Below the pieces are notes generated by a model. The model made no database searches, had not been told where the DNA came from, and saw nothing but the letters and a program-made list of their open reading frames with translations. DNA of 64,000 bases, from the IMG/VR virus record IMGVR_UViG_3300044644_001125, positions 62,001 to 126,000 of that record. One strand, written 5' to 3'. Positions 12,781 through 39,149 of the stretch are shown piece after piece; position 1 is the first letter of the stretch; each line of letters begins with the position of its first letter. A program made the translations under genes and the position numbers.

Positions 12781-13097
12781 TAATTATCTTTTAGGATAGA
12801 TCTATTGTAGATCTATTATCTTTTAGGGTGCAGGCCCGAAAAAGGGTACGGTTTCTCAAAAATCGAGCCGCGTAAAAAATACAGGGTAGGTACTTATGAA
12901 ATAGGGGGTACCGTTTTCCAACCCCCGCACCCGTATATACACCCGTATATTATACCACACCTTTTTGCACCTTGTCAACCTTTTTTTCTTTTATTTTCGA
13001 GTCGAAAGTGCTTGACATTTTGCGCGAGCTGTGCTAACCCTTTTTTGCCCGAACGAGCTGCTACCACGTTTTGCCGTGCTTGTCAAGTCTTACCCAC

Positions 13098-13129
13098 ATA
13101 AAAAAAGACTTGACATAATGTCAAGTCTA
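13098..13129 (-). terminator. Intrinsic terminator closing the early array
   Basis: AGACTTGACA/TGTCAAGTCT inverted repeat with A7 on + strand. Confidence 0.6.
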
Positions 13130-13265
13130 TGAGTTTAACCCTTTAGTGGTTATCTGTTTTAACTGGTAGCCTATACCGTTTCAATGTATAGGCTTAAATC
13201 GTTCATAATTGCCTTTTAAGGCGTGATAGACTGATAAGTAATACCAGTCTATCACTCTATGCGGT

Positions 13266-13832
13266 TTAGGCGTGTAACGCGGTTTTAGCGTTCAAATTCA
13301 ATTCCATTTTATTTGCTTTAATCGCTGTAATGTTTTCGATTTTGATAGTACGAACAATGGTAGAATGAATCACGTCATTTGTTTTATTATATACAAGGCT
13401 ATTATCGTTCAATAGCTTTTCACGTTCACTAGGTGTTAAGTATTGTGAAACAGTCATTTTGTCTACTTCAATACCGTCTATTGTATAGACTGATTTACTG
13501 GCATTGTTAAAGATAGCGTACAGGTAAGCCGTGCCATTAGTTTTATGATTAACGATTGAAAAGCAAGTTTTATCATGTTCAAAATATGTATCGCTTACTT
13601 CAAAATTATTGATTGATTGCCCGTCAATTTTGTTTGCTGATTTAATCACGGCACGTTGATAAACTTCAAAATCTTTGAGTGTACCGAATAGCGTTACATT
13701 GGCTTTAGACTGTTTCATGATTTTAATATCTTTGAATTTAGCCGCTGTTTTAACTTGCGTAGTGTATTCAATGCTAGCAAACGTGCTACCATTAGCGATT
13801 AAAGATTTTACTGTTTCGATGATTGCTTTCAT
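13266..13832 (-). CDS. Early hypothetical protein
   Basis: 188-aa ORF with own promoter. Confidence 0.75.
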   Translation of the reverse strand: MKAIIETVKSLIANGSTFASIEYTTQVKTAAKFKDIKIMKQSKANVTLFGTLKDFEVYQRAVIKSANKIDGQSINNFEVSDTYFEHDKTCFSIVNHKTNGTAYLYAIFNNASKSVYTIDGIEVDKMTVSQYLTPSEREKLLNDNSLVYNKTNDVIHSTIVRTIKIENITAIKANKMELNLNAKTALHA

Positions 13833-13980
13833 GATAAGTTACCTATTTTTAGTGATTAAGTGATTTTGCCCGTTAAGCGTTTTGCTTAACTTGTGGCATA
13901 TTCTACAGCAATTCACGGCAATGTCAAATTATTTTGAGCGAGCTGGTATTCAATCCATTGAATACCAGTAAATTCGCGGT

Positions 13981-14715
13981 TTAGGCTTTAGTTTGATATT
14001 TTCTGTTTGCATCAATTACGGCTTTAGATACTTTTGTTTTGCCCGTGCCATGCGCTGTAAAGCCAATAATGACGCGGTTTTGCGTTCTATCCTTTGCGCA
14101 TAACATACAGTTAATGCACTGGATTTTTTCGTTATATTCATTAGGGCATTGCACCACTTTAACGTCATCAATCTTTTGTACTTTAGGGCTATTCAATGGC
14201 ATAACTAAAACCGCGTTAATGCCATTATCTAAAGCCGTTTTTGCTTGTTCAATGCTTTCACAGCTCGCGTTAACGTGTAAGCCTTGTTTGAATGCTGATT
14301 GAAAAGCAATTAAATTGCTTTCAATGGTTAAATCATGATGACTGTAAAGTATTGTGTTTAATTGACGTTTAACGATAATATCAACTAATTGATTGAATAA
14401 ATCAACTAAAATAGTTTGGTCTTTATGTGGTAAATCACCCATAACATTTAGGCGTAATTTTGCGCTTTTATCCATGTGACGTATGTTAGATAACAAGGCT
14501 TTAAAGTCTAATCCTGTTTTATCCAATTTACGCCATTGGATACCAGTATAGCTATAATCAGCATAACACCCGTTTAATTGCATTTTAACCGCGTCTACGA
14601 TAACGGTTTTAATGAAAGGGCATGAAGTAGGGCATGAATCACTTGACGTGCTAGTAACTGCAATGTTACCTGTTTTTGAATTTTGAGATACCGCTGTAAA
14701 TGAATAATTAAACAT
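13981..14715 (-). CDS. Gp88-like Fe-S protein
   Basis: NSKTG, CPTSCP...GCYA, RLNVMGD, CP...CINCMLC, GFTAHG. Confidence 0.65.
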   Translation of the reverse strand: MFNYSFTAVSQNSKTGNIAVTSTSSDSCPTSCPFIKTVIVDAVKMQLNGCYADYSYTGIQWRKLDKTGLDFKALLSNIRHMDKSAKLRLNVMGDLPHKDQTILVDLFNQLVDIIVKRQLNTILYSHHDLTIESNLIAFQSAFKQGLHVNASCESIEQAKTALDNGINAVLVMPLNSPKVQKIDDVKVVQCPNEYNEKIQCINCMLCAKDRTQNRVIIGFTAHGTGKTKVSKAVIDANRKYQTKA

Positions 14716-14883
14716 GGTTTGAATCCTGTAGTGCTTTTGTTAAGGTGGGTATAGTTTAACGGTTTGTTGCTACCATGTCAAATTTATTTTTGCATAACGC
14801 ATTATACGCGTATAGGCGTATATCATTACAGCGGGTAACGGGCGTTTTATGCTGATTTAACGCCCGTCACAGCTCGTTCGAGC

Positions 14884-15204
14884 TTAGATACCGTACTCGC
14901 GTATTGTGTACAATTCTGATTTTGTTTCGATTGCCTTGTAATCACCAAACGCAATGCTAGGATTAGCAAAGGATTCGCTGGCATCGTCATAAGCGGCTTT
15001 AGCACGTTCTACATTCGACCAAAATGACGATGATTCGAGTTTGATTGACGCGGTTACGATACCGTCTGTTTCACTGATTGCATCAGCATCATAGAACGAC
15101 CAATCGCCTAGATTAAAAGACAATTCTACATTGTCCCATAAATCAGCAGGTACTTCTACAACAAAGTTTACAACGTAGGTTAAGTTTTGATTATTCGCGT
15201 TCAT
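14884..15204 (-). CDS. Early hypothetical protein
   Basis: Start moved to MNANNQ after AGGA SD. Confidence 0.7.
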   Translation of the reverse strand: MNANNQNLTYVVNFVVEVPADLWDNVELSFNLGDWSFYDADAISETDGIVTASIKLESSSFWSNVERAKAAYDDASESFANPSIAFGDYKAIETKSELYTIREYGI

Positions 15205-15292
15205 GGTATGAATCCTATAAAGTGTAGTGAAAAGAGCAAGCCGTTTGACTTGGTGCATATTCTACACGAATTACACACCAAGTCAAATCTTT

Positions 15293-15586
15293 TTACGCTG
15301 GTAGGCGATAACGTGGAACGTCCGTGTATTCGCTTAGGACAGACCACCCATATTGCAGGACAGGCTCTTCACGTTCTGATACTTCGCCACTGTAGGCATT
15401 GGTAACGGTGGTAGACCAAACAGGCTCGAAAGCCTGCCATTTTGTCCATGCTTTTGCATAACCATTGTAGGCATAGGCACGTTGAAACCATGCGCCTGTA
15501 GCAGATAGCGCGACTTCTACGTTTACGCCAAAAGTGTTTGAGCCACCAAATGCGCGTACTGCTTTCACTGTTTTTGATGTTGCCAT
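15293..15586 (-). CDS. Early hypothetical protein
   Basis: Cassette promoter and GGAG SD. Confidence 0.75.
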   Translation of the reverse strand: MATSKTVKAVRAFGGSNTFGVNVEVALSATGAWFQRAYAYNGYAKAWTKWQAFEPVWSTTVTNAYSGEVSEREEPVLQYGWSVLSEYTDVPRYRLPA

Positions 15587-16020
15587 GATGTTTACTCCGT
15601 AGTGCTTTGTTAAGGTGGGTATATTCTAAAAGATAATTAAACTATTGTCAACCTCTAAATTCATATACGCGTATACACGTATAGGCGTGTATACTCACAG
15701 CGGGTACTGGTAGACTTCACGCCTACCAGCTCCCTCGGATTGGTTAACTATCGCTGTTGATGTATACCCATTCAGCGTATAACTCTTCTATTGTTGTGCC
15801 GTACTTCAATTCTAGTTTTTCTTCTTTGTTTAGTTTTTTCGCATACTCTTCGATTGTTTTGATTTCAGTTGGCACTGCGTATATTTTACCTTGGAATTCA
15901 ACAGATGTAGGTTTATTAGAATTGTCGTAGTGTAGGATTGGTTTCATTGTCTTGTTTCCTGTAGTGCTGTTTAGTGAGGTTATAGTCTAATGGATTATAA
16001 CCTCACTGTCAAATTTATTT

Positions 16021-16368
16021 TTAATCTAGTCTACTGCAAGCATAAGCGTCGATACCGTTATCGCGTAAGACTTTGGCGTATGCTTGTGCGCCTGCTTCGA
16101 GTGTATCCACGTTTTGAACGTGAAGTCTGCTAGGATTCCATAACTCAAAGCATTTTGAGGTATAACCTTTATCGAATCCTAGACTTTCCAATTGTTTACC
16201 TAGTTTGCTATTGGCACGAATGCGTTGTTCAATGCGAACCCAAGCGAAACCGCAGGCGAATCTATCAACACCACCTAGTTTGTTGATAAAGTATTCGCGT
16301 GCCGCAGTTTCAGCGGCTAATGATGCTTGTGTGTGGATTGCTGTTAAGTCTAAAGTTGTAGTAGTCAT
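16021..16368 (-). CDS. Early hypothetical protein
   Basis: CGFAWV...SRLD phage-type small protein; cassette promoter. Confidence 0.75.
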   Translation of the reverse strand: MTTTTLDLTAIHTQASLAAETAAREYFINKLGGVDRFACGFAWVRIEQRIRANSKLGKQLESLGFDKGYTSKCFELWNPSRLHVQNVDTLEAGAQAYAKVLRDNGIDAYACSRLD

Positions 16369-17024
16369 TTTAAATGTCCTGTAGTGCTGTTGTTTAGTGA
16401 GGTTATAGTCTAATGGATTATAACCTCGATGTCAAATTATTTTTATTCGAAAGATAAAGCAATCGTAATACCGTTTTTGGTAGCTTTGCCAGCAGTGCGT
16501 ACTTTGCTTTGTAATTGCATTGCTTGTGCTGTTTGGCTTGCTGTATAGCCACCACCGCAGACTTGTAGGCAGACTGCCGCGAGTGCATCGATTGGGTGTT
16601 GTGTTTTGAAGTTAGGTTTTTTAGTAACTGTGATGTAGGTTGTCATTGCTTTGTTTCCTGTAGTGCTTTGTTAAGGTGGTGATAGTTTAGTTGATAACTA
16701 TCACCTTGTCAACCATTATCTTTTAATTAAGTTTATAGTAATGTTCCACGGCTAACCCATTACCAGCACCGCAATCGAATAATTCGGTACGGCATGATAG
16801 TACATTATCTTTGAGTAATTCGTGAAACGCGGCGGTTATTTGCTTATCTAATTGAACCCATTTATTGAAATCAGTTCTGAATGCGTGATGATATTCTGCT
16901 AAAGTCCAGCAGAATTTTGACGCAGATACTTCTGTTTGTTTGGTTAATGCGTCAATGATTAGTGCTTTCATGGTGTTTACTCCGTAGTGCTTGTTAAGTT
17001 GGGTATAGTCTAAAAGATAATCGT

Positions 17025-17291
17025 TTAGCTGTCAACACTTTTATTTTGTCGTTCACGGCTTGCCATAGCCATCAGTGAGAAGTTGCTACATTTATCTTCC
17101 CAGCGTAGTAAATCCGCCACTGCGTAGCGTATGTGTTCTTTTTTGTACACTCTAATTTCTTGGTTTACCGCACCATTAGCAAATACTCTAACGTTCCAAC
17201 CTTTACCGATTCGTCTAACGGTGATTTCATGATGACACCAACCTAGACCTATTCGAGCTGGTGTTATGATTTGTTCTAATTTTATTTTCAT
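17025..17291 (-). CDS. Early hypothetical protein
   Basis: Cassette promoter and SD. Confidence 0.7.
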   Translation of the reverse strand: MKIKLEQIITPARIGLGWCHHEITVRRIGKGWNVRVFANGAVNQEIRVYKKEHIRYAVADLLRWEDKCSNFSLMAMASRERQNKSVDS

Positions 17292-17424
17292 AATGTTTAC
17301 TCCGTAGTGATGTTAAGTTGGGTACATTATAAAGGCGAATGTACCTAATGTCAACTCTATTTTTGCCTATACGTGCGTATATGGGTATAATGCGCGTATA
17401 GGCTTGCGTACTCACAGCGGGTAC

Positions 17425-17637
17425 TCAGTATCTGTGACGTCTTGCGTATCGTCTTTTATCGTAGTAGCCTCTGCGATAGTCGCCATATCGATAATGCGGG
17501 ACATAGTTATACTCTTTGAGGTATACTGGATGGCCCGGAATGTAGGTGGTGTCTGTTTCATAGATTGGATAGGTTGCCTCATAGACAGGGCCAGCAGTAC
17601 AACCAGTGAGCAATAAGATTAAGATATATTTTAGCAT
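17425..17637 (-). CDS. Small putative lipoprotein
   Basis: MLKYILILLLTGC lipobox. Confidence 0.55.
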   Translation of the reverse strand: MLKYILILLLTGCTAGPVYEATYPIYETDTTYIPGHPVYLKEYNYVPHYRYGDYRRGYYDKRRYARRHRY

Positions 17638-17904
17638 GATAGTCTGATGTGGTCGATGGTTTCGTGGACTGTTAAGGTTTCAGTAATTAAGTTAATCACG
17701 GTGCCGTTTTCCAGTGGTTTAAGTGATACGATGTATTTTGTGTTAATATAGATCGTTTCGTGTTGTTCGTTGGTAACTGGTAGTAGCATAAGGATCCTTT
17801 TGATTATGGCTCGTCACTAACGTGACTCGCTAGGTTATATGTGTATGTATATGTGTATAATTACCCGCGTGAATGGCGTACACTCACAGCGGGTAATGTG
17901 GATT

Positions 17905-18327
17905 CTAAAGTAAATCGTGGATATGGTAGCAATTTTGGTAGAAGTAAGGTAGTTTAGTTTTACCTACTGATTCGTTTTCTACACGAAACTCGTAGAAGTA
18001 ATCGTCATAATCGTCTGTGTTAGATTCTTTAGTTGGTTCGTACTCCCAGAATGTCACGATGCCGCTACCAGATACGGTTAGGTAGTTTGCCCATGATGGT
18101 GCTGGTGAGTCGGTTATATCGGCTAGTGCTAGTGGCAATTCGATGACTGTTGGTTTGGTCACAGGTGTGAATGATTCGCCTAGATACGTTGAACTTGACA
18201 TACTGAACACGTCATCACTGATAATCCATGTTTCACCGTAGTGTGCATTGACTTGATTGTCTTTGATGCTAATGAATAACGCGCCAGTTGGGATTGTGCT
18301 TGTGTCGATTACTTCGTATGCTTTCAT
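17905..18327 (-). CDS. Early hypothetical protein
   Basis: Cassette promoter and SD. Confidence 0.7.
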   Translation of the reverse strand: MKAYEVIDTSTIPTGALFISIKDNQVNAHYGETWIISDDVFSMSSSTYLGESFTPVTKPTVIELPLALADITDSPAPSWANYLTVSGSGIVTFWEYEPTKESNTDDYDDYFYEFRVENESVGKTKLPYFYQNCYHIHDLL

Positions 18328-18408
18328 GGTCTTTGCTCCGGTAGTGCTTGTTAAGTTGGGTATAGTTTAATCGTAAATTGACGAACTGTCAAGCATTATC
18401 TTTTAGAA

Positions 18409-18540
18409 AAAGAAAAACCTAACAGAGCACTACTTCTGTTAGGTTGTTTCAGTGGTGGTATACTAGGGTCACTACTCCCACATTGACCACCTTGTTACTG
18501 GGCGTTGGTTAGGTTTCCATGCCCAGTGGATTTGCACTAC
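18409..18540 (-). ncRNA. Candidate sRNA/3'-UTR RNA with AGUAGUG loops ending in a terminator
   Basis: Hairpin 18416-18445 (loop AGTAGTGC, U-tail); hairpin 18454-18491 (loop AGTAGTGA); further GTAGTGC at 18534-18540. Confidence 0.55.
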
Positions 18541-18987
18541 ACTTTGAATTTTGGGTTTGTTTTGCCAATGGTTGCCGCGCTTAGTAGCTGGATTGTTTTG
18601 TTGTCGAATCCGAGCTGTTTGGCTAGGTCTTTGACTGTTTCTTTTGGTTTAGTGGGTTTGTTCATTTGGCAGTGCCTATTTGTGTTTTAAGGGGTGTACA
18701 AGGCTCGCGCGTTGCGCTCGCGAGCCTAATGTTTATAAACCTTTTAATAACTGGTTTACTACTGGTTTTAAATCGTCTTGTAGGTTATCTAGTTCTAATT
18801 GGTATTCTAAACTTTCGCTGTATTGTTCTAAATCTCTTACTACATAGTCAAGTAATCTCATTCTACCTTCTAGGGTTAGGACTTCGTACATATCAATGGT
18901 AATTGGACTGTAGTTACTCATGGGTAGTGCCTCTTTGTTTTGTTAAGGTGGTGCTATTCTAAAAGATAATTAACGCACTGTCAAGTA

Positions 18988-19599
18988 TTATCTTTTAGTT
19001 AGAATCAATCTAATGTCTTTCTTTTCTGGGGTATAAGCCCAAACTCGTTGGTCGAAGTCGTAGTCTTCTTCACCGTGGTGTAGTTTAACATTGGTTTCTA
19101 GTATGGTGTTAGTTGCAATGTCTACGATGTCTACTTGGTATTCTTCTAGGTTGCTAAACATTTTCCAAAGTTTTCTCGCGCCATAGTATTGTTCTTCGCC
19201 ACCCATTAGCGTATAACCTGCGTCAATTAGGCTCATATAGCTACCTGATGCAATGCCACGTCCATATTGGTTATCGACAACCTTGACTGCTTTAACGCTT
19301 AGTATGTTACTATAGTGTTCAAAGTTTGGCATTTTTTCAAGGCTAATTTCACCAGATACTTTAAACTTATCCTTTATAGTTTTGTAGTTCTTATCGATGT
19401 CTTCAGCAAAGAACCCGACAACAAACTCATAAGAGTTGTTTAGTTGATAGCGTTCCATTACGCTATCAGTCGTGTTTACAGTTCCAACAAAGGTATATTT
19501 GCTTTTCATTACACCCATTGTTATATCTGAATAGGCTAGTTGGGTATTCCATTCACCGTATCGTGCGATTGACATTTCTGTTAAGTCTTTTATTCTCAT
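18988..19599 (-). CDS. GNAT-like acetyltransferase
   Basis: VKVVDNQYGRGIA acetyl-CoA motif, ARKLW; N-terminus MRIKDLTE. Confidence 0.6.
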   Translation of the reverse strand: MRIKDLTEMSIARYGEWNTQLAYSDITMGVMKSKYTFVGTVNTTDSVMERYQLNNSYEFVVGFFAEDIDKNYKTIKDKFKVSGEISLEKMPNFEHYSNILSVKAVKVVDNQYGRGIASGSYMSLIDAGYTLMGGEEQYYGARKLWKMFSNLEEYQVDIVDIATNTILETNVKLHHGEEDYDFDQRVWAYTPEKKDIRLILTKR

Positions 19600-20924
19600 G
19601 GTCGTTCTCTTGGTTACAAGGCTCGCCTACGGCTCGCAAGCCTTGTATTGAGTTATCTTTTAGTTATCTATCGCCAACTGCTTCGTTATGTAGTTGTTTA
19701 ATGCGTTCGTCTGTTTCGATGGCAAAGTAACTTTGTAAAATGCTTTTTAAGTATCCAACGTCTTCTAAACAGGTATCTAGTGCATCATCGACTAATTCGT
19801 CTATTAGTTGTTCAATATTCATGGGTAGTGCCTCTTTGTTTTGTTAAGGTGCGAGTAGTATATAACTACTCGCTGGGTTTGTCAATTGTTTTTTATTGGT
19901 CTTCTAGCATTAAGTCTTCAAGGTTTGTAACTAAGCCGTCAAAGTCTTCATCTGGGCCGAGTGTACTTGCGTAGAAGAAGACTGTTTCGCGGTCGATGCC
20001 GAAGTCATCTGCTAGGTTGTTCAAGTAGTCTTTGCGGTTTTTGTAACCTTCTTCAGTGTAAATGCTCATAGGTAGTGCCTCTTTGGTTATCTTGTAGCGG
20101 TATTGCTACAAGGTGGTTATATTCTAAAAGATAATTGATTTACTGTCAACTGTTTTATTGTACTGGTTTGCCATTTTCGTCATAGATACCAGTACGGTTG
20201 TGCATTTCGTCATAGTTGTCTAGGCATTCATTGATTTTGTCGTTGTTGCCTTTGTAGAGTGTTTTACAGAAACCCACTTGATAGCCTACTGTTGGTTCTA
20301 CTGCTCTATAGATAAAGTAAGCACTTGTTAAGGTGATTACTGATAATATGATTGATGTTATGATTTCTTTCATTGTTTTTCTCTGTTCGGTTAAGGTGGT
20401 GATAGTTTAATCGTTTATCACCACCGTGTCAAATCTTTTTTATGCGAAGTCTTTAACTAATTCTACTTCGGTTGCGTATGGGAAGAACTGCTCGAATAAC
20501 TCGTTTGCTTTGGTCGATGACTCTGCGTTGATTACCAAGGTTTCTTCAGTGCCGTACATACCAATGTAGTGGTATTGATATGGGAATAGTTCTTTCATTT
20601 GTAGTGCCTCTTGGTTTTGTTAAGGTGGGTACAGTATAGTTGTTCTGTACCCAGTTGTCAACTATTATTTTGATTGGCAGGTTGCCGCGTATCCGATTAA
20701 ACCTTCTTCTAGTGCGTGGTTTAATGCTGGTGTAATTTGTGCTTTGTAGGTTTCGCATTCAGCAGTGGTTGTGAAGTTACGCGCCACATTAGTTGGTGTG
20801 TCGTTGTTCATGTCAACTGGTGTGAAGTAAAGTGATACGAGTAAGATAATCATTTTGTTTGTCCTGTAGTGCTTTGTTAAGGTGGGTACATTGTATTCTC
20901 AATGTACCCAGTTGTCAACTCTTT

Positions 20925-27680: not shown

Positions 27681-27693
27681 CATGTCTATTCTC

Positions 27694-27834: not shown

Positions 27835-27855
27835 TGTCTTTACCTTTATGTTTGT

Positions 27856-30710: not shown

Positions 30711-30789
30711 TGTCTTTACTCCGTAGTGCTTTGTTAAGGTGGGTACAGTATAGTTGTTCTGTACCCAGTTGTCAACTCTTTTTTTTCAA

Positions 30790-30901: not shown

Positions 30902-31658
30902 CTCTTAGGCTCGTGCCTATCGGCACTCGCTAAGTTGGGTACATTATCTTTTAGAATGTACCCATTGTCAAGTATTATTTTAAACTACCTTACCTACGAA
31001 AACGTAATTATGTCTACTCATATCAGCTAGATTACCAATCGAGTTAATCCAAAAAGGATCTGTATTTTGTGAATCAAGTATAACCTTATTGGCAACTTCT
31101 TCTAGGTGGTGTACCTTGTTTACTTGAGTTTTACCTAGTAAGATACTATTGTCTAAATTATCTTTTAGTGCTTTAGCCACTTGCGCTAAGTCACTTTCGT
31201 GTCTGGTAAAACTACCAGCAATGGATATTGGGTTTATGTTCATATTAGCACCTATCACTTTGATGTGGCAAACAATGCCGTAAATGCCCACAGCATACTC
31301 TTAATGCCGCGCCATTGAGCGGCGCGTATTGCTGTAATAGATACTGTGGTGACCTGTGTTCTTCGTATGGTGGTGGCATCATTACTGTTGGTGACATTTG
31401 GCAACCATACAAAGAAACTAAAAGTATATAGGCTATTTTACGCATGACTGAGTACCTAACAAAACAAAACCGAAACAGATTAACCCAAAGCCAACTGCTA
31501 TTGCAATAATTGCCGTTAACCACTGGCTAGTCATTAAACCTAAGTCACCAATCGAACCTAGTGCCATACCTGTTGCGATTGAAGTCATCGCTTTACTTAA
31601 ATTTGTCATAGAGTGCCTCGTGTGCGTAGGTGTACCCGCCTTCACAGCGGGTAATCTG

Positions 31659-32162
31659 TTAGTGTCTTGTTGCTGGCTTGATACCAAAGATGGTATACAT
31701 CCGTTCATCAAACTTATCTAAGATAACGTCTGGTAGGATTTCCATAAGTTCATCTATGATTTCTGCCTTGAGTTGTTCAACATCAATCATTTCAACTTCG
31801 GTTTGTTTAGTTGTAAACTCGTTCTCTTGGCTTAATTGCAAGAGTACCGTTTCAAGGTTATGCAATGTTTTATCCTGTCGAGTGGCAACTTCCCAAAAAC
31901 CAATTCGATTATAGATAAAGATATAATCAGCATTAGTTTCATCTAAAAGATGATTGAGTGTCTTGTGTATCTCACTTTCATCTAGGTCACCAGTATCATC
32001 CGTTATTTCTGCTCTATCTCCTATCAACATCAATTTAGAGATGTTACTTTGGTCGATGTTAGCTAAAAGATAACGTCCAACATCTTTTAGAGTTCCTTCG
32101 TGGATATAGACGGATTCAACGACACCACCTTCTCTTACCCATGCAACTGTACTACTAGGCAT
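31659..32162 (-). CDS. Diverged paralog of 25992-26402
   Basis: SVYIHEGTLKDVGRYL, LMLIGD, DYIFIY pattern. Confidence 0.6.
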   Translation of the reverse strand: MPSSTVAWVREGGVVESVYIHEGTLKDVGRYLLANIDQSNISKLMLIGDRAEITDDTGDLDESEIHKTLNHLLDETNADYIFIYNRIGFWEVATRQDKTLHNLETVLLQLSQENEFTTKQTEVEMIDVEQLKAEIIDELMEILPDVILDKFDERMYTIFGIKPATRH

Positions 32163-33738
32163 TTTCTACCTCTCTTGCGATTATATCTGCTATTGTTTCG
32201 TCAGTGGCTTTATAGATAAGCCAGTTACCAATCTGTACCTTATGCTTTGCGTTCATGTACTTTAAACCAAAGTTACCCTCAAAGATTCGTTGTTTAGCGG
32301 CTGGGATGATGATAACATCCTCGCCAATGTACAAGTGGGTTCTGTCGGTATTATCAGTCAACAACGCCTTAAAGGTTGTTTCACTGGTATGGTTATCAAC
32401 GTACTGTTGGAACAAATCCGCCATTGGACTTGTTACTACTTCTTCAAACTTCATGTTATCGTTCCTTGTTAGCTCACCGCTAACGCGGTTCGCACGTTAA
32501 CGGTGAAGTTGTTAGTTAAGCTGGGTTAAGTATCTGTAATCCGTAGATTAAATCTTCGTCTGTAATCTCATCGTATGAGAGTATGTATTGTTCGCCATCA
32601 TCAACTGTATGTACATGAATCATCTTATCCTCTGGTGATAAGCCATCAATCACATAATCAACGTCATCTTTTACAATTAAGAATGCTTGTTCGATTAAGG
32701 TATTAAGTTGTTCTCTTGTTCTCATTGGTAGTGCCTCTTTGTTAGTGTAGTGGTATGGTATCAATTATCTTTTAGGTTGTCAACTTATTTCTTACTGTCC
32801 ATTAAGTCTTGCATACCGTCTAAGTGGTAGATTCGATTCTTATGGAATACAAACCCACCTATGTTTGTAAAGTAAATTTTGCAGTAGTTAGTTGCAATGT
32901 CTTTTTGGAAGTGGGTGAATACTGCAATACCCGCAATCAACGCGCCAATCGCAATACCACTAACAAATGCTCTTAATCCCCTAAAGTTATCTGATACTTC
33001 TACTAATCTTGGTTTCTGTTCGTAAGTTGCCATCTGTAGTGCCTCTTTGTTAAGTTGTGGCTATTCTAAAAGATAATCGAACTGCTGTCAACAACTTTCT
33101 GTAACAAGGTTCTCATGTCTTGGCATTCGCTGTCATCTTCTTCTGAAAACTCATAACCAAACGCAATAATATATTCTAAGGCAGTTTTAATCAAGTCTAC
33201 TTCATTTGCGTCAAAGTTCATGTTACTGTACTCTATAGTTATGTTTAAGGTCAATGTCTGGTGTCAATGGCATTGGTTTAGCTTTCGTATCAGTTCTTGG
33301 TAAGTGGATTTGTTTATGGTTAACGATAACATACTCTACCGTAAACTTATCTGGGCAAATCTGATACAAGGTTTCACCACTGCAATGTACATGGTCATAG
33401 AATCCTGTTTCATCTGGGAAGTCTGGTACATCAATAACCGCGTGTGCATTGGTGGTAAAAATGGCTAGTGCTAGTAGTAATTTCTTCATTGTCTTTTCTC
33501 GATTGTTGCTATTGTTCCAACTAAGTTTTGTGCAAATGTTGCTTTGAATTCTTGGTTATTCAGTGAAGTTGTTTTAACCCATTCATCGATAAAGTAACTT
33601 ACTGGTGTTAACTTTCTTACTTGGGACTTAGCCACTCCTGTATGGGTTGCTAAGGTTTGTTCTATTGTGGTCATGTCGCTATCCTCTGTTAAGTTGCAGG
33701 TATCTTACCCTAAAATACCTGCATTTGTCAACAACTCG

Positions 33739-34197
33739 TTAGTAAAATTCCGGCATGAATTCTTCTTCAAAGTCATCGATAAAATCGAGTTCATTAAAGT
33801 CATTATCTGCAAACTGTTCCATGTCTACATCACTTGGTGTATAATTGCCTTTCTTTGCCGCTACATAGCTTGTAACTCTATCAACCAGTCTTTCCATTGG
33901 CTTGTCTAAGTTCTTCCCAGTGACGGTGCCTGTGTTGCATTCTAACTTGATGTCAAATAACACATCCGCCAAGCCTACTGAATATTTAATGTCGCAATCG
34001 AATAAGAAGTTTACCGCGCCACTGGTGTTAGATTTTAAACCGTTTTGATAGTAATCATAGTATACGCGTCCAATGGCTCTCATCATCTCACCTTCAACAC
34101 TTCCAGCATTACCTGCTTTTGGTACGATTTCTTTTAATGCGTTATATTCGTTTTGCATTTTGCCTAGATTGTTCCAGTATATGTTTTTCATTTTCAT
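33739..34197 (-). CDS. Conserved phage early protein
   Basis: YWN..GK.Q, GEMMRA...YYDYYQNG. Confidence 0.7.
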   Translation of the reverse strand: MKMKNIYWNNLGKMQNEYNALKEIVPKAGNAGSVEGEMMRAIGRVYYDYYQNGLKSNTSGAVNFLFDCDIKYSVGLADVLFDIKLECNTGTVTGKNLDKPMERLVDRVTSYVAAKKGNYTPSDVDMEQFADNDFNELDFIDDFEEEFMPEFY

Positions 34198-35573
34198 TTA
34201 CTCCGTAGTGCTTGTTAAGGTGGTGATAGTTTAATTGGAAACTATCACCGTGTCAAGTTATCTTTTAGTCTTCAGATTCTCTGCGGTCTAATTCAATGGC
34301 TAGTAACTCTTGCATAACTTCAGTAAAGGCATCTCTTGATTCTAATTCTGAATACAACTCAAACTTGAGTTCCAGTTCATCGTATGTCATTTCACTGATT
34401 TGGTTTTTGATTTCATTTATGTTCATTGGTAGTGCCTCTGGGTTGGTTAGGTTAGGCTCGCGCGTTGCGCTCGCGAGCCATGTATGTTGTTTAGATGATA
34501 CAATCGTTATCTGCATCAATTTCCAATGTTACGCATTCGGTGGAAATATCGTCACCATTATCAATCCATGCCAATCCAACACGATTTTTATCTATTGTGA
34601 ATTGTTCATCTGCGTATGCAACCGATACCACTACCGGTAAGTCTGCATCGAATGTGGATAATACTGCAATTAGTTCTTTGATTGTCATTATCTTTACTCC
34701 GTAGTGCTTGTTAAGGTGGTGATAGTTTAATTGGAAACTATCACCTTGTCAAGTTATCTTTTAGGTTAGGCTCGCGCGTTGCGCTCGCAAGCCTTGTATG
34801 TTTAGGTTGACACCTACTTGATTAGAGTAGTTAGAAGGTGCAGTTTCCTTCCATGCCAAGTATCACTTGCACTGCACCCTTATGTCATTATCTTTTAGGT
34901 TATTGGTCTTCGTATGCTCTGGCTAGTAACTCTGCCGTTTTAAAGATATGGTGAACTCTATCATCTTTTAGTGCGATTTCAAGAGCCTCCTCGTCATCAA
35001 TCGAGAAGTCATTGTCAAAGTGTTCTACCATGTACTCCTCGAAACTATCTGCCTCAGATTCTAGCAAGTAGTCTAAGATACTAGACAAACGGTTTAAGTT
35101 GGTTTCTGTTAAGGTGATTGTTCTGTATTGTTCGCTCATTGTCTATTACTCCGTAGTGCTTTGTTAAGGTGCGAGTAGTATATTACTACTCGCTAAGTTT
35201 GTCAACTTCTATTCATGGTACATTTTACCGTTAAATTCTACTGCTTGTGGTTCATCGTCAGAATCTGCCCAATCAGTCCAGTAAATCGCGTCATCCGCGT
35301 AAGCATCTTCGTAAGTGGCATATCCAGCCGCAATACTCCATTCAACTGCATCTTTGATATTCTTAAAGTATTGGTCTGCCTCGCTGGTAACCCATCCTGC
35401 GTTCATACCTTCACCAGTGATTGAACAAACTCGCATCCAAGTTTTAAATTCTGTAGTCATTGTCTTTACTCCGTAGTGCTTTGTTAAGGTGCGAGTAGTA
35501 TATTACTACTCGCTTTAAATGTCAACTATTTTTTTCTTCGTACTGGCTCGTGCCTATCGGCACTCGCAGAAAT

Positions 35574-35867
35574 TTAATCGATGGTTCTAACTGCTCTGAC
35601 GTATCCGTCACCGTAACTCTTACCGTAGTAACTCTGAATCCCGATTGACATATGATTACTCCATGCGTTGACATCATTATACTCAGTAGATGACCAGTAG
35701 TAATCTTCCTCAAACTCATTTTCCGATTCATAAATCTGCGTTAGTTCGTCTGTGGTTGGTAAACGCCATCCTGTTTTCTCGTTGATATTAAGCGAAAAGC
35801 AGTATTGGCTGGCATCATACCAGTTGGCTTGAATCTCTGTTTCTTTTGGTGCGATTTCAATGTTCAT
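35574..35867 (-). CDS. Mini DUF1566/C-lectin-fold protein
   Basis: W.DA..YC...GWRLPT..EL...YWSSTE...VRAVR. Confidence 0.8.
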   Translation of the reverse strand: MNIEIAPKETEIQANWYDASQYCFSLNINEKTGWRLPTTDELTQIYESENEFEEDYYWSSTEYNDVNAWSNHMSIGIQSYYGKSYGDGYVRAVRTID

Positions 35868-35941
35868 ATCTTTTACTCCGTAGTGCTTGTTAAGGTGGGT
35901 ACATTCTAGTTGAAATATACCCAGTTGTCAACTATTTGTTT

Positions 35942-36202
35942 TTAGATTATTCTGGTTTGTTTTATTACTGCACATTCGATTCTATCTGCTGAAATTTCTT
36001 CACCAAACTCGCCATCCGTGCCTTTGAATAGTACAGTGCTACCAGCTACTTCAACTAAAGCAACCTCGACCACTTCGCCACAATCTTTAACATATATTTG
36101 ATAGTCTTTGGCAACCTCGTAATCGATTGAATCCGCATAATCCGAGTATTCTACCAAGTATGGCATGATTTCAGCTAAGGTGGTTTCTGTCATTGTGTAC
36201 AT
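35942..36202 (-). CDS. Early protein (paralog A)
   Basis: MYTMTETT...IECAV shared with 36916-37179. Confidence 0.75.
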   Translation of the reverse strand: MYTMTETTLAEIMPYLVEYSDYADSIDYEVAKDYQIYVKDCGEVVEVALVEVAGSTVLFKGTDGEFGEEISADRIECAVIKQTRII

Positions 36203-36915
36203 GGATATTCTCCGTAGTGCTTTGTTAAGGTGGGTATATTCTAGTTGAAATATACCCAGTTGTCAAGTTATCTTTTAGGTTAAATCGTGTTCTAATTTAG
36301 GGTATGTTGCGCGTAAGGTTTCAATCTTTGCTATTAAGGCAGTTATATCTGCTACTATCTCGTCCCTAGCAGTGACTTCACTCTCTGTCAGTGACTTTAA
36401 GTAATCAGTGTCATAGATGTCAAACATAGCTTTAATGTCACGTCTGTATGACTGTACCATGCTATAAAGGTCTGACCGTTTTTGAATGCCGTTCCAGTAT
36501 AAACTACTCATTGGCTTTACTCCGTAGTGCTTTGATAAGGTGGTGATAGTTTAATTGAAAACTATCACATTGTCAATCTTTTTTACCCGTGAGTTAGTTC
36601 TGCCTCAGCATCTTCTAGTGCATCAGCGACTTCTTCTTTAAAGTTGATATTATGACAATCACAGTAACGAATAATATCTACTAACAAATCTGCTACGGTT
36701 GTTTCATAACCATAATCTTCTAATTTTAATATTGCCGCAATCTTTTCAACACCAGTGTAAAAAGAAAACTTTTTAAATACTTCTTCTCCTTCTGGCATTT
36801 CCTGTAGTTCTGCTAACACAAGTTTAATCGAATTGTTCATGTTGTTTACTCCGTAGTGCTTTGTTAAGGTGGGTATATTCTAGTTGAAATATACCCAGTT
36901 GTCAACTATTTGTTT

Positions 36916-37179
36916 TTAGATTAGTCTGTTTTGTTTCATTACAGCGCATTCAATACTATTGACTTTGGCAGTACCGCATTTACCACCACCAATGTTTCTG
37001 AATGTCACGCTATCACCTAAGACTTCTACTGTTCCTACTTCTACCACATCACCAAACTCTTTTACATAGAGTTGAATATGACGTGCTGGTTCGTATTGGA
37101 AGAATCCATTGTCCTCCTCGTCAAACAATTCCAAGTAAGGTAATAAATCAGCAAAGGTGGTTTCTGTCATTGTGTACAT
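36916..37179 (-). CDS. Early protein (paralog B)
   Basis: Paralog of 35942-36202. Confidence 0.75.
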   Translation of the reverse strand: MYTMTETTFADLLPYLELFDEEDNGFFQYEPARHIQLYVKEFGDVVEVGTVEVLGDSVTFRNIGGGKCGTAKVNSIECAVMKQNRLI

Positions 37180-37246
37180 GGATATTCTCCGTAGTGCTTT
37201 GTTAAGGTGGGTACATTCTAAAAGAAAATACCCACCATGTCAATCT

Positions 37247-37960
37247 TTATTTTGTGCGAATAACGAATCCGCTAGTATCTTTTTTCGCGCGTCCTTTGGC
37301 TTTCAATCCAATAACCAAGTCTAGGTTAGTATTATTGAATCTTAAGTCATCCAAGTCACCATCAACTACAGGAACACCATTCCAAGTGGCGGGTACTTCA
37401 TCGAATACCACTGCAATAGAGTAACCTTGTTCCAATGCTTTCATTACGTCTGCATCGTTTGATTCTGCTCTACTGAATGTTAAATGGTAGTTACCTAGGT
37501 GCTTAACCTTACGATTAAGAATCTTACTGTAGTCGTAGAATTGTACTGTAGGGAAGTGTTCAAACACGTTCTTACCACCAACGTAAATGTTTTCCCATAG
37601 AATGTCACTTGTACCATTTAAACGGAATACAGGTGTCATACCTTTACGCTCTGCTTGTTTAATGGCTTTTGTTATATCAGTGATTAAGGTTTCCATGAAA
37701 ACCTCTCTGTTTGTTTTAAAGAACACGGTTCTACGTTTACGAGCCTCTTGTACCGCGTTAGTGGTTTCACCTGCTTTAAACATACCACCATGTCCAGCAG
37801 TATTCAAACAAGCCGCTCTGCATCCAGCAGTAGCCTTTGGGCAAGTGTTCATTACACCAGATAAGTCACTTGGTGCTAGGTGAAGAATGTAGGATTTATA
37901 ACCTTGTGATTCACCTTTAATGATTTTAAGGTTTGAAGTAGTGAGAAGTGAAAATGCCAT
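37247..37960 (-). CDS. Gp88-like Fe-S protein
   Basis: CPKATAGCRAACL, RLNGTSD, QFYDYSK, YHLTFS, GDLDDLRF, GLKAKG. Confidence 0.75.
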   Translation of the reverse strand: MAFSLLTTSNLKIIKGESQGYKSYILHLAPSDLSGVMNTCPKATAGCRAACLNTAGHGGMFKAGETTNAVQEARKRRTVFFKTNREVFMETLITDITKAIKQAERKGMTPVFRLNGTSDILWENIYVGGKNVFEHFPTVQFYDYSKILNRKVKHLGNYHLTFSRAESNDADVMKALEQGYSIAVVFDEVPATWNGVPVVDGDLDDLRFNNTNLDLVIGLKAKGRAKKDTSGFVIRTK

Positions 37961-38031
37961 TGTAGTAACTCCGTAGTGCTTTGTTAAGGTGGGTACATTG
38001 TATTCTCAATGTACCCATTTGTCAAATCTTT

Positions 38032-38226
38032 TTATCCGATTGCTTGTAACAAGTACGCGTATGTGATTTCTTTCTTCGTTCCTTTTGGTAAACCTAGCAA
38101 CTGGCAAGCCATTGTATTAGCCGATTTTCCACGACCTTTCAATCCTTTGATTTCTAATCCAAGTGCTGATTTCAAGGTTAATAACTGGAATCTGTTGATT
38201 TGTTCTGGTGTAGTTAATACGCTCAT
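38032..38226 (-). CDS. Small early protein (copy 2)
   Basis: Near-identical to 20925-21119. Confidence 0.8.
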   Translation of the reverse strand: MSVLTTPEQINRFQLLTLKSALGLEIKGLKGRGKSANTMACQLLGLPKGTKKEITYAYLLQAIG

Positions 38227-39149
38227 CTTTGTAACTCCGTAGTGCTTTGTTAAGGTGGGTATAGTTTAGTGGATCTTTACCCTGTTGTCAACTCTTTTTT
38301 TTCTTCTTATTGGCTCGTGCCTATCGGCACTCGCAAACAAGTGGGTACATCCTACTCGAAAATACCCACCTTGTCAAATCTTCTTTTAGTGTGATGCAAT
38401 TATCGAATCATTGGACAATGAAAACCAATAACCACGTCGCTTATAGTCTGCAATGATTGCAAAGGCCTCCTCCTCTGGCATAGCTTGCAGCTCGTCCAAG
38501 TCTAGTTTAATCGAATCATTACGTGGTTTTGTGCCTAGTATAAATGTCGGTTCGTTCATTTTGTTTGCTCCTGTATGTTTATGTTTCGGCGTATAGCCTA
38601 CCAGTAGTTAGCCGAGTTGTCAACAACCCACTAACTCATCATACAGTTCTTGGTAAACACTGCCTTGGTATGCACCATCATCAAAGTCCATGACAGCACA
38701 TCTCTCAATAAAATCCAGATTGGATTCACCCTCATATTGCTCGTACAGCACAGAATACTTCTCATAAGCCTCTGGGATTTGTTTAACTTTCTCAATATAT
38801 GAATCTATCATCGTAGTATCCTCTTGGGTTTAAGTTGGCATTAGTCTACCAAGTTACTGGTTACTTGTCAACTCTGTATACCAAACTCCCTATCAATCCA
38901 CTCCTGCTCATCTGGATACACATAAGTGAAGATGACTTCCCCATCTTTTAGGGATCTCAAATCCTCCATGAAGTCATGGGGATACAGGATGTCTGCGCCT
39001 TCAGGCAGAACTGATGAGTCGATGATGGTTACGCCAGTTGCTGTTGTTGCTTGTAAGTAGTTTGCCATGCGGTTTCTCTGGGTTGTGGTTATTTGTGGGT
39101 ACAGTCTAAAAGATAATTAACCCAATGTCAAGCATTATCTTTTAGGCAT

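What the first reader, a model, noticed from the sequence alone, without database searches (positions are those of the whole stretch)
13000..38900. Regional GATC avoidance confined to the early array
Seen by manual scan: only about ten GATC sites in about 26 kb (none noticed from 13.0 to 17.7 kb), several of them in the CoiA gene and RNA elements, whereas GATC is common in 1-12.9 kb and after 39 kb. Established: the first-transferred DNA of T5 is depleted of restriction/Dam sites. Inference: this segment enters the cell first or is otherwise exposed before protection is established.
Basis: partly seen in the sequence, partly recalled or inferred. Interest (0 to 1): 0.6.

Follow-up and report, generated by a model that had tools for sequence, protein, structure and literature searches.

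The report
Restriction-site-poor early gene array
A 26-kb block of about 60 small early genes in a 327-kb lake-water phage has lost nearly all GATC and many other short palindromes that restriction enzymes cut, probably because this DNA must survive in the cell before the phage can protect itself.

Summary
Window 12,811-38,952 holds 10 GATC sites (0.38/kb), against 2.33/kb in the rest of the 327-kb genome. No other 26-kb window has fewer than 35.

The GATC-poor zone coincides with an array of about 61 small minus-strand genes. About 45 of them have a conserved sigma70-type promoter and leader.

Against a shuffle that keeps each gene's protein and codon usage, GATC O/E is 0.14 in the array and 0.69 elsewhere. 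GGCC, AGCT, CCGG, GCWGC, CGWCG and CCWGG are depleted too, and 6-bp palindromes as a class (0.48 vs 0.78). 29 of the 64 palindromic hexamers are absent.

Gene size, sigma70 promoters and codon usage do not explain it. A recently inserted CoiA-like gene inside the array is not depleted.

This is restriction-site avoidance concentrated on the early array. The entry-first idea is plausible but unproven:
- The closest cultured relative, PA5oct, keeps its early array in a 39-kb terminal repeat.
- A genome-unique 12-nt iteron cluster sits at that repeat's border, and a similar cluster borders this array.
- Termini could not be measured here.

None of eight comparison phages shows a regional effect of this size.

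The parts
12811..38952 (.). GATC-poor and palindrome-poor zone, bounded by the flanking GATC sites at 12,810 and 38,953
   Evidence: 10 GATC in 26,142 bp. 29 of 64 palindromic hexamers are absent, against 14.3 +/- 2.9 in other windows. A composite of 7 site types gives 2.56/kb, against 9.6 and 10.1/kb in the flanks.
13266..39068 (-). Array of about 62 small genes (median about 85 aa), all on the minus strand. Nearly all are of unknown function and few are paralogous.
   Evidence: ORF lists and my own gene calls. Only 5 weak or strong paralogue pairs. Pfam and PHROGs name only DUF7227, GP88, HNH, CoiA-like, DUF1281_C and Lcl_C. 41% of the proteins have pI < 4.6, against 17% elsewhere.
14713..39141 (-). 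About 45-50 copies of a conserved early promoter plus leader. On the minus strand it reads TTGACA-N17-TA(G/T/A)A(A/C)T ... CACCTTAACAAAGCACTACGGAG-N7-ATG.
   Evidence: Repeat families D1-D19. The signature TAGTGCTTTGTTAAG occurs 21 times, all inside the array. 50 of the genome's 109 TTGACW-N17-TAnnnT matches lie here on the minus strand. 45 of 61 genes have a match within 120 nt.
12210..13265 (.). 1,056-nt non-coding, repeat-rich gap at the transcription-distal border of the array. It is a candidate packaging or terminal-repeat border, or an injection-stop-like region.
   Evidence: No ORF is called here. It contains GGTTCAGGCC three times, inverted CCTAAAAGATAAT copies, and a palindromic TTGACAT-AATGTCAA pair at about 13,101-13,125. 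Analogous non-coding, repeat-rich borders occur in T5 (iss, 9,140-10,149), PA5oct and XacN1.
12708..12827 (+). Tandem 12-nt iterons (GTCGATTGTAGA and variants, 5-6 copies), followed by two TCTATTGTAG..ATTATCTTTTAGG units that carry the GATC sites at 12,799 and 12,810
   Evidence: (family D20). The cluster is unique in the genome. PA5oct has a unique 12-nt iteron cluster at 39,110-39,240, next to its coverage-defined terminal-repeat border at 39,080.
39103..39174 (-). Upstream border of the array: an intrinsic terminator hairpin (39,174-39,156), then the first array-type promoter (39,131-39,103)
   Evidence: Upstream genes (39,185-40,394) are GATC-rich and are preceded by a different motif, TTACCCGCTG-N17-TATACA.
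26474..27409 (-). CoiA-like nuclease gene (CoiA_N plus DUF5710). It is a recent insertion and is not depleted.
   Evidence: Pfam. It is absent from the close relative G001. GATC+GGCC+CCGG+AGCT are 8 observed against 9.1 expected.
22151..25995 (-). Variable block containing an HNH endonuclease (22,462-23,388) and six small genes. It is absent from the close relative.
27856..27931 (-). tRNA-Met (CAT). It holds the GATC at 27,883.
25322..25906 (-). Acidic (net charge -26) DUF1281_C/Api92-like protein. It was examined as a possible anti-restriction candidate and no functional lead emerged.
   Evidence: The model has pLDDT 96. The only fold match is Api92, PDB 2IJR, of unknown function.

Best explanation
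The interval is the host-RNA-polymerase early-gene array of a 327-kb lake-water jumbo phage distantly related to Pseudomonas phage PA5oct.

The phage has no detectable DNA methyltransferase. It uses site avoidance as an anti-restriction strategy: about a dozen hexamers are almost eliminated genome-wide. Selection against Type II-like sites is much stronger on the array, where GATC, GGCC, AGCT, CCGG, GCWGC, CGWCG, CCWGG and about half of all palindromic hexamers are removed.

Most likely mechanism: this 26 kb (8% of the genome) lies at a physical end of the packaged DNA, within or ending a long direct terminal repeat as in PA5oct. It is the part of the genome that has to stay uncut and be transcribed by host RNA polymerase before array-encoded functions neutralise restriction or the rest of the DNA arrives. 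This is the logic of T5 first-step transfer and of the T7-like leading region.

Shown:
- the regional depletion and its specificity for palindromes;
- its coincidence with the early promoter array;
- its independence from gene size, promoter type and codon usage;
- its absence from a recently inserted gene.

Inferred:
- that restriction enzymes are the selective agent;
- that the array is terminal and enters first;
- that the array encodes the protective function.
For: Depletion:
- GATC 0.38/kb against 2.33/kb; the top three regionally depleted 4-mers of 136 are all palindromes.
- The codon-preserving shuffle gives O/E for GATC 0.14, GGCC 0.21, AGCT 0.44 and CCGG 0.44. Elsewhere the values are 0.69, 0.75, 0.68 and 0.84.
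- The sum of 6-bp palindromes is 135/282, against 3348/4270 elsewhere. GCWGC is 1/15.4 (rest 1.0), and CCWGG is 0/6.2.
- Palindromic hexamers have median z -1.79, non-palindromic ones -0.02 (Mann-Whitney P = 4e-10).
- CGWCG is 2/19.4.
- 29 palindromic hexamers are absent, against 14.3 +/- 2.9 in other windows.
- This is the only such region in the genome.

The early array:
- The promoter signature occurs only here.

Controls:
- 28 genes outside the array with sigma70-type promoters have GATC O/E 0.81.
- 198 small genes outside the array have 0.85.
- The CoiA-like gene, absent from the close relative, is not depleted (8/9.1).
- Both junctions of the array are supported by independent assemblies.

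Anti-restriction context:
- No Dam, N6/N4 or C5 methyltransferase was found.
- Genome-wide, TCTAGA is 0/58 and AAGCTT is 1/74.

Terminal position (indirect):
- 86 genes are syntenic with PA5oct, and the terminase is 39-47% identical, over its matched pieces, to that of Vibrio phage 2.275.O, which also matches PA5oct's terminase gene at 43%.
- PA5oct has a 39,080-bp terminal repeat holding 105 genes, mostly early, transcribed by host RNA polymerase on one strand (PMC7318152).
- The relatives XacN1 and Sharanji also have long terminal repeats.
- A genome-unique 12-nt iteron cluster lies at the PA5oct repeat border and at the distal border of this array.
- The contig assembles as a circle, as a collapsed terminal repeat would.

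Precedent:
- T5 and BF23 are restricted only through sites in the first-step-transfer DNA (PMC10644984).
- Murciavirus phages are restricted only through motifs in the first-injected region (PMC12455610).
Against: - No direct evidence on termini, coverage or entry order. Only Logan contigs were available.
- Their per-contig depth shows no two-fold step at the right border of the array. Array contigs have depth 24-33; a contig running out of the array has 23.7. This is weak, because depth of that kind is unreliable. A terminal repeat longer than the array would also hide a step.
- PA5oct, the model for the terminal-repeat analogy, shows no palindrome depletion at all.
- Atu_ph07, XaC1, Vibrio 2.275.O and two metagenomic early arrays show none either. 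The trait is therefore lineage-specific and not a general property of such arrays.
- There are no homologues of T5 A1, A2 or dmp.
- No known anti-restriction family is found in the array.
- The rest of the genome also avoids some sites strongly, so it is not fully protected.
- The array has a distinct codon usage (GC3 0.34 vs 0.29) and an outlying 4-mer signature. This leaves room for a separate evolutionary history.
- The host and its restriction enzymes are unknown.
Confidence: 0.55

Rival explanations
1. Early-fragment survival without ordered entry. The whole genome enters at once. A site-free early array survives as an intact, transcribable fragment. Its products (nuclease inhibitors, ligase or recombination helpers) then allow the cut remainder to be rescued or out-replicated. 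Selection therefore falls on the early transcription units wherever they lie in the molecule.
For: - The depletion follows the block of early-promoter genes, with sharp borders and no gradient along the 26 kb.
- No coverage step is seen at the right border.
- The rest of the genome is under weaker but real site avoidance.
Against: - With about 700 GATC sites elsewhere, removing about 40 from the array gives little benefit unless the rest is otherwise shielded or repaired.
- 28 genes outside the array with sigma70-type promoters are not depleted.
- The clade packages with long terminal repeats that hold the early genes.
Confidence: 0.17
2. Legacy of a separate history. The array, or most of its genes, came from or keeps exchanging with phages that avoid palindromes genome-wide (as XacN1 does). 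It still carries their composition. Position in this genome plays no part.
For: - The array's non-palindromic 4-mer signature is an outlier (r = 0.78-0.83, against 0.95 +/- 0.02), and its codon usage differs.
- Homologues of its DUF7227 gene sit in contigs almost free of GATC.
- XacN1 has no GATC in 385 kb.
- Gene content varies between close relatives.
Against: - About 55 unrelated genes share the depletion and one promoter/leader family, which points to long residence.
- GC content equals that of the genome.
- The most recent insertion is the one gene that is not depleted, the opposite of what import of depleted DNA predicts.
- Much of the signature shift is explained by codon usage.
- Without continuing selection the depletion would decay.
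Confidence: 0.12
3. Self-protection from phage nucleases. Early phage-encoded or phage-activated nucleases degrade host DNA while only the array is present, and the array lacks their target sites.
For: - The array encodes HNH, CoiA-like and endonuclease VII-like proteins.
- T5 degrades host DNA during first-step transfer, and how its own DNA escapes is unknown (PMC10644984).
Against: - The nuclease genes are the variable, recently inserted ones.
- The range of avoided motifs is too wide for one or two nucleases.
- This explanation still needs ordered entry.
Confidence: 0.06
4. A GATC-specific cause linked to host Dam: avoiding methylation, SeqA binding or MutH nicking on early promoters and genes.
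For: GATC is the single most depleted word. CCWGG, the Dcm site, is also absent.
Against: - The depletion extends to GGCC, AGCT, CCGG, GCWGC, CGWCG, ATTAAT, GATATC, ATGCAT and palindromic hexamers as a class.
- It lies in coding sequence rather than in promoters.
- The host is unknown.
- T5, which infects a Dam+ host, shows no GATC loss in its first-step-transfer DNA.
Confidence: 0.04
5. Artefact of composition, small genes, repeats or a chimeric assembly.
For: - Expected GATC from trinucleotides is somewhat lower in the region.
- Repeated promoters make up about 13% of it.
Against: - The Markov and codon-shuffle nulls both give O/E of 0.12-0.14.
- Small genes elsewhere are normal.
- The analysis was restricted to coding sequence.
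- Both junctions are confirmed by independent assemblies.
Confidence: 0.02

Closest known systems
First-step-transfer (FST) DNA in the terminal repeat of phage T5 and BF23 (Demerecviridae)
   Same: - About 8% of the genome.
- Pre-early genes are read by host RNA polymerase from strong sigma70 promoters, mostly towards the nearby end.
- It contains an HNH endonuclease.
- It is bordered by about 1 kb of non-coding, repeat-rich DNA.
- The phage is restricted only through sites inside it (PMC10644984).
- T5's FST lacks EcoRI, EcoRV, HindIII, BamHI, PstI and SalI sites.
   Different: - No A1, A2 or dmp homologues here.
- 26 kb and about 61 genes, against 9 kb and about 17.
- The depletion is far stronger and includes 4-5-bp sites.
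- T5's FST has normal GATC (O/E 0.83) and only mildly fewer 6-bp palindromes (0.69 vs 0.82).
- Two-step entry is not shown here.
Early-gene array in the 39-kb direct terminal repeat of Pseudomonas phage PA5oct (Arenbergviridae)
   Same: - Closest cultured relative: 86 syntenic genes, and a DnaB-like helicase 50% identical.
- Dozens of small genes of unknown function on one strand.
- TTGAC/TATAAT promoters, dependent on host RNA polymerase.
- The array ends at a non-coding gap with a genome-unique 12-nt iteron cluster (PMC7318152).
   Different: - PA5oct shows no palindrome or GATC depletion anywhere.
- No array gene is shared at E <= 1e-5.
- The array lies at a different place in the conserved backbone.
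- A terminal repeat is not demonstrated here.
[quoted passage not shown]
   Same: Restriction acts mainly on the DNA that enters first. That region is variable, is rich in anti-defence genes and is selected to lack target motifs (PMC12455610).
   Different: - Those cases concern a few kb and mostly Type I motifs.
- Entry is driven by transcription away from the leading end.
- Here Type II-like palindromes are avoided over 26 kb, and transcription runs towards the putative end.
Genome-wide restriction-site (palindrome) avoidance in phages, for example Xanthomonas phage XacN1
   Same: The same kinds of words are avoided. XacN1 has 0 GATC in 384,670 bp and a 6-bp palindrome O/E of 0.4-0.7 throughout.
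   Different: There the avoidance is uniform along the genome, terminal repeat included. Here it has two tiers, with a sharp regional maximum.

Membership tests
Restriction-site (short palindrome) avoidance | Recognition-type words are under-represented against a null that keeps protein sequence and codon usage | tested here: met
   GATC 6/41.7, GGCC 3/14.1, AGCT 26/59.7, GCWGC 1/15.4, and 6-bp palindromes 135/282.
Restriction-site (short palindrome) avoidance | The depletion is specific to palindromic words and does not apply to all words | tested here: met
   Hexamers: median z is -1.79 for palindromes and -0.02 for the others, P = 4e-10. Among 5-mers only particular sites are depleted, not the class.
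Restriction-site (short palindrome) avoidance | The avoided words match the specificities of the host's restriction enzymes | not testable with these tools
   The host is unknown. The phage is known only from lake-water metagenomes.
T5-type first-step-transfer segment | It lies at a physical end of virion DNA, inside a long direct terminal repeat | tested here: inconclusive
   - The contig assembles as a circle.
- Relatives have long terminal repeats.
- An iteron cluster like the one at the PA5oct border is present.
- Logan contigs show no depth step at the right border.
- The left border could not be tested.
T5-type first-step-transfer segment | It enters first, followed by a pause before the rest of the genome | not testable with these tools
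   This needs an isolated phage-host pair.
T5-type first-step-transfer segment | Pre-early genes are driven by host sigma70 promoters | tested here: met
   45 of 61 genes have TTGACW-N17-TAnnnT within 120 nt. This rests on sequence only; no RNA data were available.
T5-type first-step-transfer segment | It encodes A1/A2 DNA-transfer proteins | tested here: not met
   tblastn of 13 T5 FST proteins against the genome gave no hit at E <= 0.01. This is therefore not a homologue of the T5 module; at most it is an analogue.
T5-type first-step-transfer segment | A non-coding, repeat-rich border region (injection stop signal) | tested here: met
   A 1,056-nt gap with iterons and inverted repeats lies at 12,210-13,265. 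The T5 iss is at 9,140-10,149. The function is untested, and the gap here lies on the side the genes are transcribed towards.
PA5oct-type terminal-repeat early array | The phage belongs to the PA5oct-related jumbo-phage backbone | tested here: met
   86 proteins match in conserved order, including across the contig ends. Pieces of the terminase are 39-47% identical to that of Vibrio phage 2.275.O, which itself matches PA5oct's terminase at 43%.
PA5oct-type terminal-repeat early array | Double read coverage over the array | tested here: inconclusive
   Only per-contig k-mer depth of Logan contigs was available: 24-33 inside against 23.7 for a contig leaving the array on the right. No raw reads were available.

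The most novel reading that the evidence does not exclude
This jumbo phage delivers its DNA in two steps, like T5, but with an unrelated 26-kb, roughly 60-gene terminal segment. Evolution has stripped that segment of nearly every Type II target. The segment encodes a still unknown broad anti-restriction function that protects the roughly 300 kb that follow. This would be the first case of first-step transfer outside the T5 family and in a giant phage. Regional palindrome depletion could then be used as a sequence-only marker for finding the first-entering DNA, and new anti-defence genes, in uncultured phages.
Probability: 0.25. Interest if true: 0.8.

Novelty: new variant of a known kind. Interest (0 to 1): 0.58.

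Why it matters
Restriction avoidance in phages is usually scored per genome. Here selection is concentrated about five-fold on one 8% segment, which happens to be the early-gene array.

If the segment is the first-entering end, three things follow:
- The pattern gives a purely computational way to locate leading DNA and packaging ends in uncultured phages.
- The roughly 60 unknown genes become candidates for anti-defence functions, including inhibitors of Type II enzymes, which are hardly known.
- Stepwise DNA delivery would be more widespread than T5 and T7.

The list of avoided sites (GATC, GGCC, AGCT, GCWGC, CGWCG, CCWGG, plus TCTAGA and AAGCTT genome-wide) also predicts the restriction enzymes of the unknown freshwater host.

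Tried and rejected
- Nucleotide search of the phage collection with the array gave no match.
- IMG/VR searches with array and flanking proteins, and with the promoter signature, found only two near-identical relatives. More distant homologues of single genes are not syntenic.
- PA5oct, Atu_ph07, XaC1, Vibrio 2.275.O and two metagenomic jumbo-phage early arrays were scanned with the same method. None shows regional depletion.
- T5 shows only a weak effect on 6-bp palindromes and none for GATC.
- Searches for Dam, N6/N4 and C5 methyltransferases in the genome found none.
- Pfam and PHROGs on all 61 array proteins found no Ocr, ArdA or other anti-restriction family.
- The acidic DUF1281_C protein was modelled (pLDDT 96). 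It matched only Api92, of unknown function. The PDB profile search was blank.
- Reads: all 24 runs are kept as Logan contigs. Contigs break at the promoter repeats, the 'joints' lie at those repeats, and no molecule ends can be read.
- Cumulative GC skew only follows gene orientation, and no DnaA boxes lie in the border gap.
- Rfam finds only the tRNA in the array.
- The idea that sigma70-driven or small genes are depleted in general was tested and rejected.
- No gradient of depletion along the array was seen.

Full report
**What the window is.**
The window is G000:C1:62,001-126,000 of a 327,256-bp IMG/VR phage contig. The first and last 176 bp of the contig overlap at 98.9% identity. Gene order shared with Pseudomonas phage PA5oct runs straight across the contig ends. 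The assembly is therefore a closed circle that was labelled 'linear' only because of two mismatches.

The phage occurs in lake-water metagenomes from 24 listed runs, each filed under its own study code. PA5oct is its closest cultured relative: 86 proteins match in conserved order, and the helicase is 50% identical. More distant relatives are Atu_ph07, XaC1, SCTP-2 and the Rak2-like phages.

**The observation.**
There are exactly ten GATC sites in 13,000-38,900 and none between 12,810 and 17,751. The flanks carry 3.2 and 3.0 sites per kb.

Against the rest of the genome (2.33/kb), 60.9 sites are expected (Poisson P = 8e-16). The poorest of 551 other 26-kb windows still has 35. The maximal-order Markov O/E is 0.12 inside and 0.50 outside.

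I called genes with a simple codon-score ORF picker (453 genes, 88% coding). I then shuffled synonymous codons within each gene, which keeps every protein and each gene's codon usage. The 61 genes in the zone have 6 GATC where 41.7 +/- 4.8 are expected (O/E 0.14). The other 391 genes have O/E 0.69.

**It is more than GATC.**
- Of all 136 strand-symmetric 4-mers, the three most depleted in the region relative to the rest are GATC, GGCC and CCGG.
- By the shuffle test, O/E in the array and in the rest is 0.21 and 0.75 for GGCC, 0.44 and 0.68 for AGCT, and 0.44 and 0.84 for CCGG.
- GCWGC is 1 observed against 15.4 expected, while the rest of the genome is at 1.00. CGWCG is 2/19.4, CCWGG 0/6.2, CCNGG 0/7.4 and GGNCC 1/7.1.
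- Summed 6-bp palindromes are 135/282 (0.48), against 3348/4270 (0.78) elsewhere.
- Several hexamers that are at normal frequency elsewhere are absent: GATATC (0/6.9; rest 1.29), ATTAAT (0/9.7), ACTAGT, AGTACT, GCATGC and CAGCTG.
- Palindromic hexamers have median z -1.79, against -0.02 for non-palindromic ones (P = 4e-10).
- 29 of the 64 are missing from the 26.1 kb, against 14.3 +/- 2.9 (maximum 22) in 93 other windows.
- A sliding scan shows this is the only such region in the genome.
- The genome as a whole also avoids a smaller set almost completely: TCTAGA 0/58, AAGCTT 1/74, CGTACG 1/21, GTCGAC 1/20 and CCGCGG 0/9.5.
- No Dam-type, N6/N4-type or C5 DNA methyltransferase was found.

The picture is two-tiered. 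A short list of sites is avoided everywhere, and a much longer list is avoided only here.

**What the region is.**
It is an array of about 61-62 small genes, all on the minus strand. About 45 of them are preceded by one conserved element. On the minus strand it reads TTGACA, 17 nt, TA(G/T/A)A(A/C)T, then CACCTTAACAAAGCACTACGGAG and the ATG.

The leader signature occurs only between window 14,728 and 38,239. Fifty of the genome's 109 TTGACW-N17-TAnnnT matches lie here on the minus strand.

The proteins are almost all of unknown function and are not paralogues of one another. They are unusually acidic: 41% have pI < 4.6, against 17% elsewhere.

The upstream (right) border is a terminator at 39,174-39,156, followed by the first array promoter. 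Genes further upstream use a different motif and are GATC-rich.

The downstream (left) border is a 1,056-nt non-coding gap (12,210-13,265). It contains 12-nt tandem iterons, inverted repeats and a palindromic pair of TTGACA boxes.

**Controls that narrow the cause.**
- Outside the array, 28 genes with sigma70-type promoters have GATC O/E 0.81 and 6-bp palindrome O/E 0.71.
- 198 small genes outside the array have 0.85 and 0.81.
- Neither promoter type nor gene size explains the effect.
- A close relative (IMG/VR 3300044655_001269, 91-98% nucleotide identity) shares the array and its left border. It lacks the CoiA-like gene and a 3.8-kb block that includes the HNH endonuclease.
- The CoiA-like gene is the one array gene that is not depleted: 8 of the four 4-bp sites, against 9.1 expected.
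- A newcomer with normal site content, sitting in the middle of the array, argues against a local mutational bias. It argues for selection that has acted over time on resident genes.
- Both array junctions are covered by independent assemblies, so the array is not a chimera.
- The array does have a different codon usage (GC3 0.34 vs 0.29) and an outlying non-palindromic 4-mer signature (r = 0.83 vs 0.95).
- Recoding experiments show that codon usage accounts for much of that difference.
- This leaves some room for a partly separate history.

**Is it the first DNA to enter?**
This could not be measured. All public runs are kept as Logan contigs, which break at the promoter repeats and show no molecule ends.

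Per-contig depths show no two-fold step at the right border: 24-33 inside, against 23.7 for a 9-kb contig that leaves the array. That is weak evidence. A terminal repeat longer than the array would also hide a step.

The indirect evidence points to a terminal position:
- PA5oct has a 39,080-bp direct terminal repeat, found by double coverage. It holds 105 genes, most of them highly transcribed early, from one strand, by host RNA polymerase (PMC7318152).
- XacN1 has a 65,875-bp repeat, and the Rak2-like phage Sharanji a 20.7-kb one (PMC11895373).
- In PA5oct a cluster of 12-nt iterons, unique in that genome, lies at 39,110-39,240. This is directly at the repeat border and at the end towards which the early genes are transcribed.
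- Here a genome-unique cluster of 12-nt iterons lies at 12,555-12,810, at the corresponding end of the array.
- In a terminal-repeat genome each repeat border is a physical end of the packaged DNA. By analogy, the palindrome-poor 26 kb (8% of the genome) would be the terminal stretch of the molecule.
- T5's main pre-early operon is likewise transcribed towards the end, and its first-step-transfer DNA is bordered by 1 kb of non-coding repeats.

**How it most likely works.**
*Shown:* intensified, palindrome-specific site avoidance, confined to the early array.

*Inferred from established work:*
- T5 and BF23 are restricted only through sites in the first-step-transfer DNA (PMC10644984).
- Murciavirus phages are restricted only through motifs in the first-injected region (PMC12455610).
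- By the same logic, this DNA is exposed to host restriction enzymes while the rest is not yet present or is soon protected. Only here, then, does every encounter with a new enzyme select against its site.

The logic is also quantitative. With about 700 GATC sites elsewhere, clearing about 40 from the array helps only if the remainder is differently exposed.

*Speculative:* that the protective function is encoded in the array. No known anti-restriction family was found. The one acidic protein I modelled matches only Api92, of unknown function.

**Comparison with known systems.**
T5 is the closest analogue by logic but not a relative. There are no A1, A2 or dmp homologues.

The effect in T5 is much weaker. 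Its first-step-transfer genes have GATC O/E 0.83 (rest 0.84) and 6-bp palindrome O/E 0.69 (rest 0.82), although EcoRI, EcoRV, HindIII, BamHI, PstI and SalI sites are absent.

PA5oct shares the architecture but has no depletion at all. XacN1 avoids palindromes uniformly and has no GATC in 385 kb. Atu_ph07, XaC1, Vibrio 2.275.O and two other metagenomic early arrays show nothing comparable.

Searches of the held literature found the concept for T5, T7-like phages and plasmids. They found no report of such a regional pattern in a jumbo phage.

**Verdict.**
The restriction-avoidance reading is well supported. The 'enters first' reading is the best available explanation but rests on analogy.

I rate it a new variant of a known kind. 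It has moderate to good interest, because it is directly testable and could serve as a sequence-only marker of leading DNA.

Noticed in passing
G000:C1 32,647-41,040 (outside the window); repeat copies at G000:C1 34,266-35,486, 165,150-166,125, 232,621-233,563 and 310,695-311,707: The large terminase gene is split into at least three pieces by inserts of 3.9 kb and 1 kb. The first insert begins with a non-coding element of about 1 kb that is present four times in the genome (about 83% identity), each time in a large non-coding gap. This is probably an intron family.
   Followed up: partly
window 5984-7822 (+): The DnaB-like replicative helicase carries an insert with HINT/intein-splicing domain matches, at residues about 250-322.
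   Followed up: no
whole genome G000: Some hexamers are almost totally absent genome-wide: TCTAGA 0 (58 expected), AAGCTT 1 (74), CGTACG 1 (21), GTCGAC 1 (20), CCGCGG 0 (9.5) and GCGCGC 0. This probably reflects the restriction enzymes of the main host.
   Followed up: partly
G000:C1 1-176 and 327,081-327,256: The contig ends overlap by 176 bp with two mismatches. The record classed as 'linear, 92% complete' is in fact a closed circular assembly.
   Followed up: yes
window 14,700-39,150 (-), for example 30,137-30,211 and 24,600-24,668: Many early promoters carry either a hairpin across the -10 box (GCGAGTAGTA..TACTACTCGC, GGGTACAG..CTGTACCC) or an inverted repeat, CTAAAAGATAAT / ATTATCTTTTAG, bracketing the -35 box and spacer. 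These may be operators or terminator-promoter overlaps. The 13-mer CCTAAAAGATAAT occurs 32 times in the genome.
   Followed up: no
window 39,300-40,500 (-): Genes just upstream of the array are preceded by a second conserved motif, TTACCCGCTG-N17-TATACA. All 13 genome copies of TACCCGCTG lie on the minus strand at window about 10-46 kb. This may be a middle-promoter class.
   Followed up: no
window 20,866-21,132 and 37,973-38,239: A 267-nt duplication at 92% identity includes a 64-aa gene, giving two copies of one gene 17 kb apart in the array.
   Followed up: no
L076-L095 (Xanthomonas phage XacN1, AP018399.1): XacN1 has no GATC in 384,670 bp, where about 1,212 are expected in genes. It also shows uniform 6-bp palindrome avoidance (O/E 0.4-0.7). 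Its terminal repeat is exactly 65,875 bp.
   Followed up: partly
L011-L016 (IMG/VR contigs with DUF7227 homologues): Six unrelated-looking phage contigs of 7-17 kb have only 0-3 GATC each, including in large genes. They are apparently genome-wide GATC avoiders.
   Followed up: no
window 38,616-38,865 and promoter-to-promoter joints such as 36,889/39,120: In two lake runs a contig skips 248 nt, removing the gene at 38,620-38,811. Other joints link one promoter copy to another. These reflect either real gene-content variation through the promoter repeats or ambiguity in the assembly graph.
   Followed up: no
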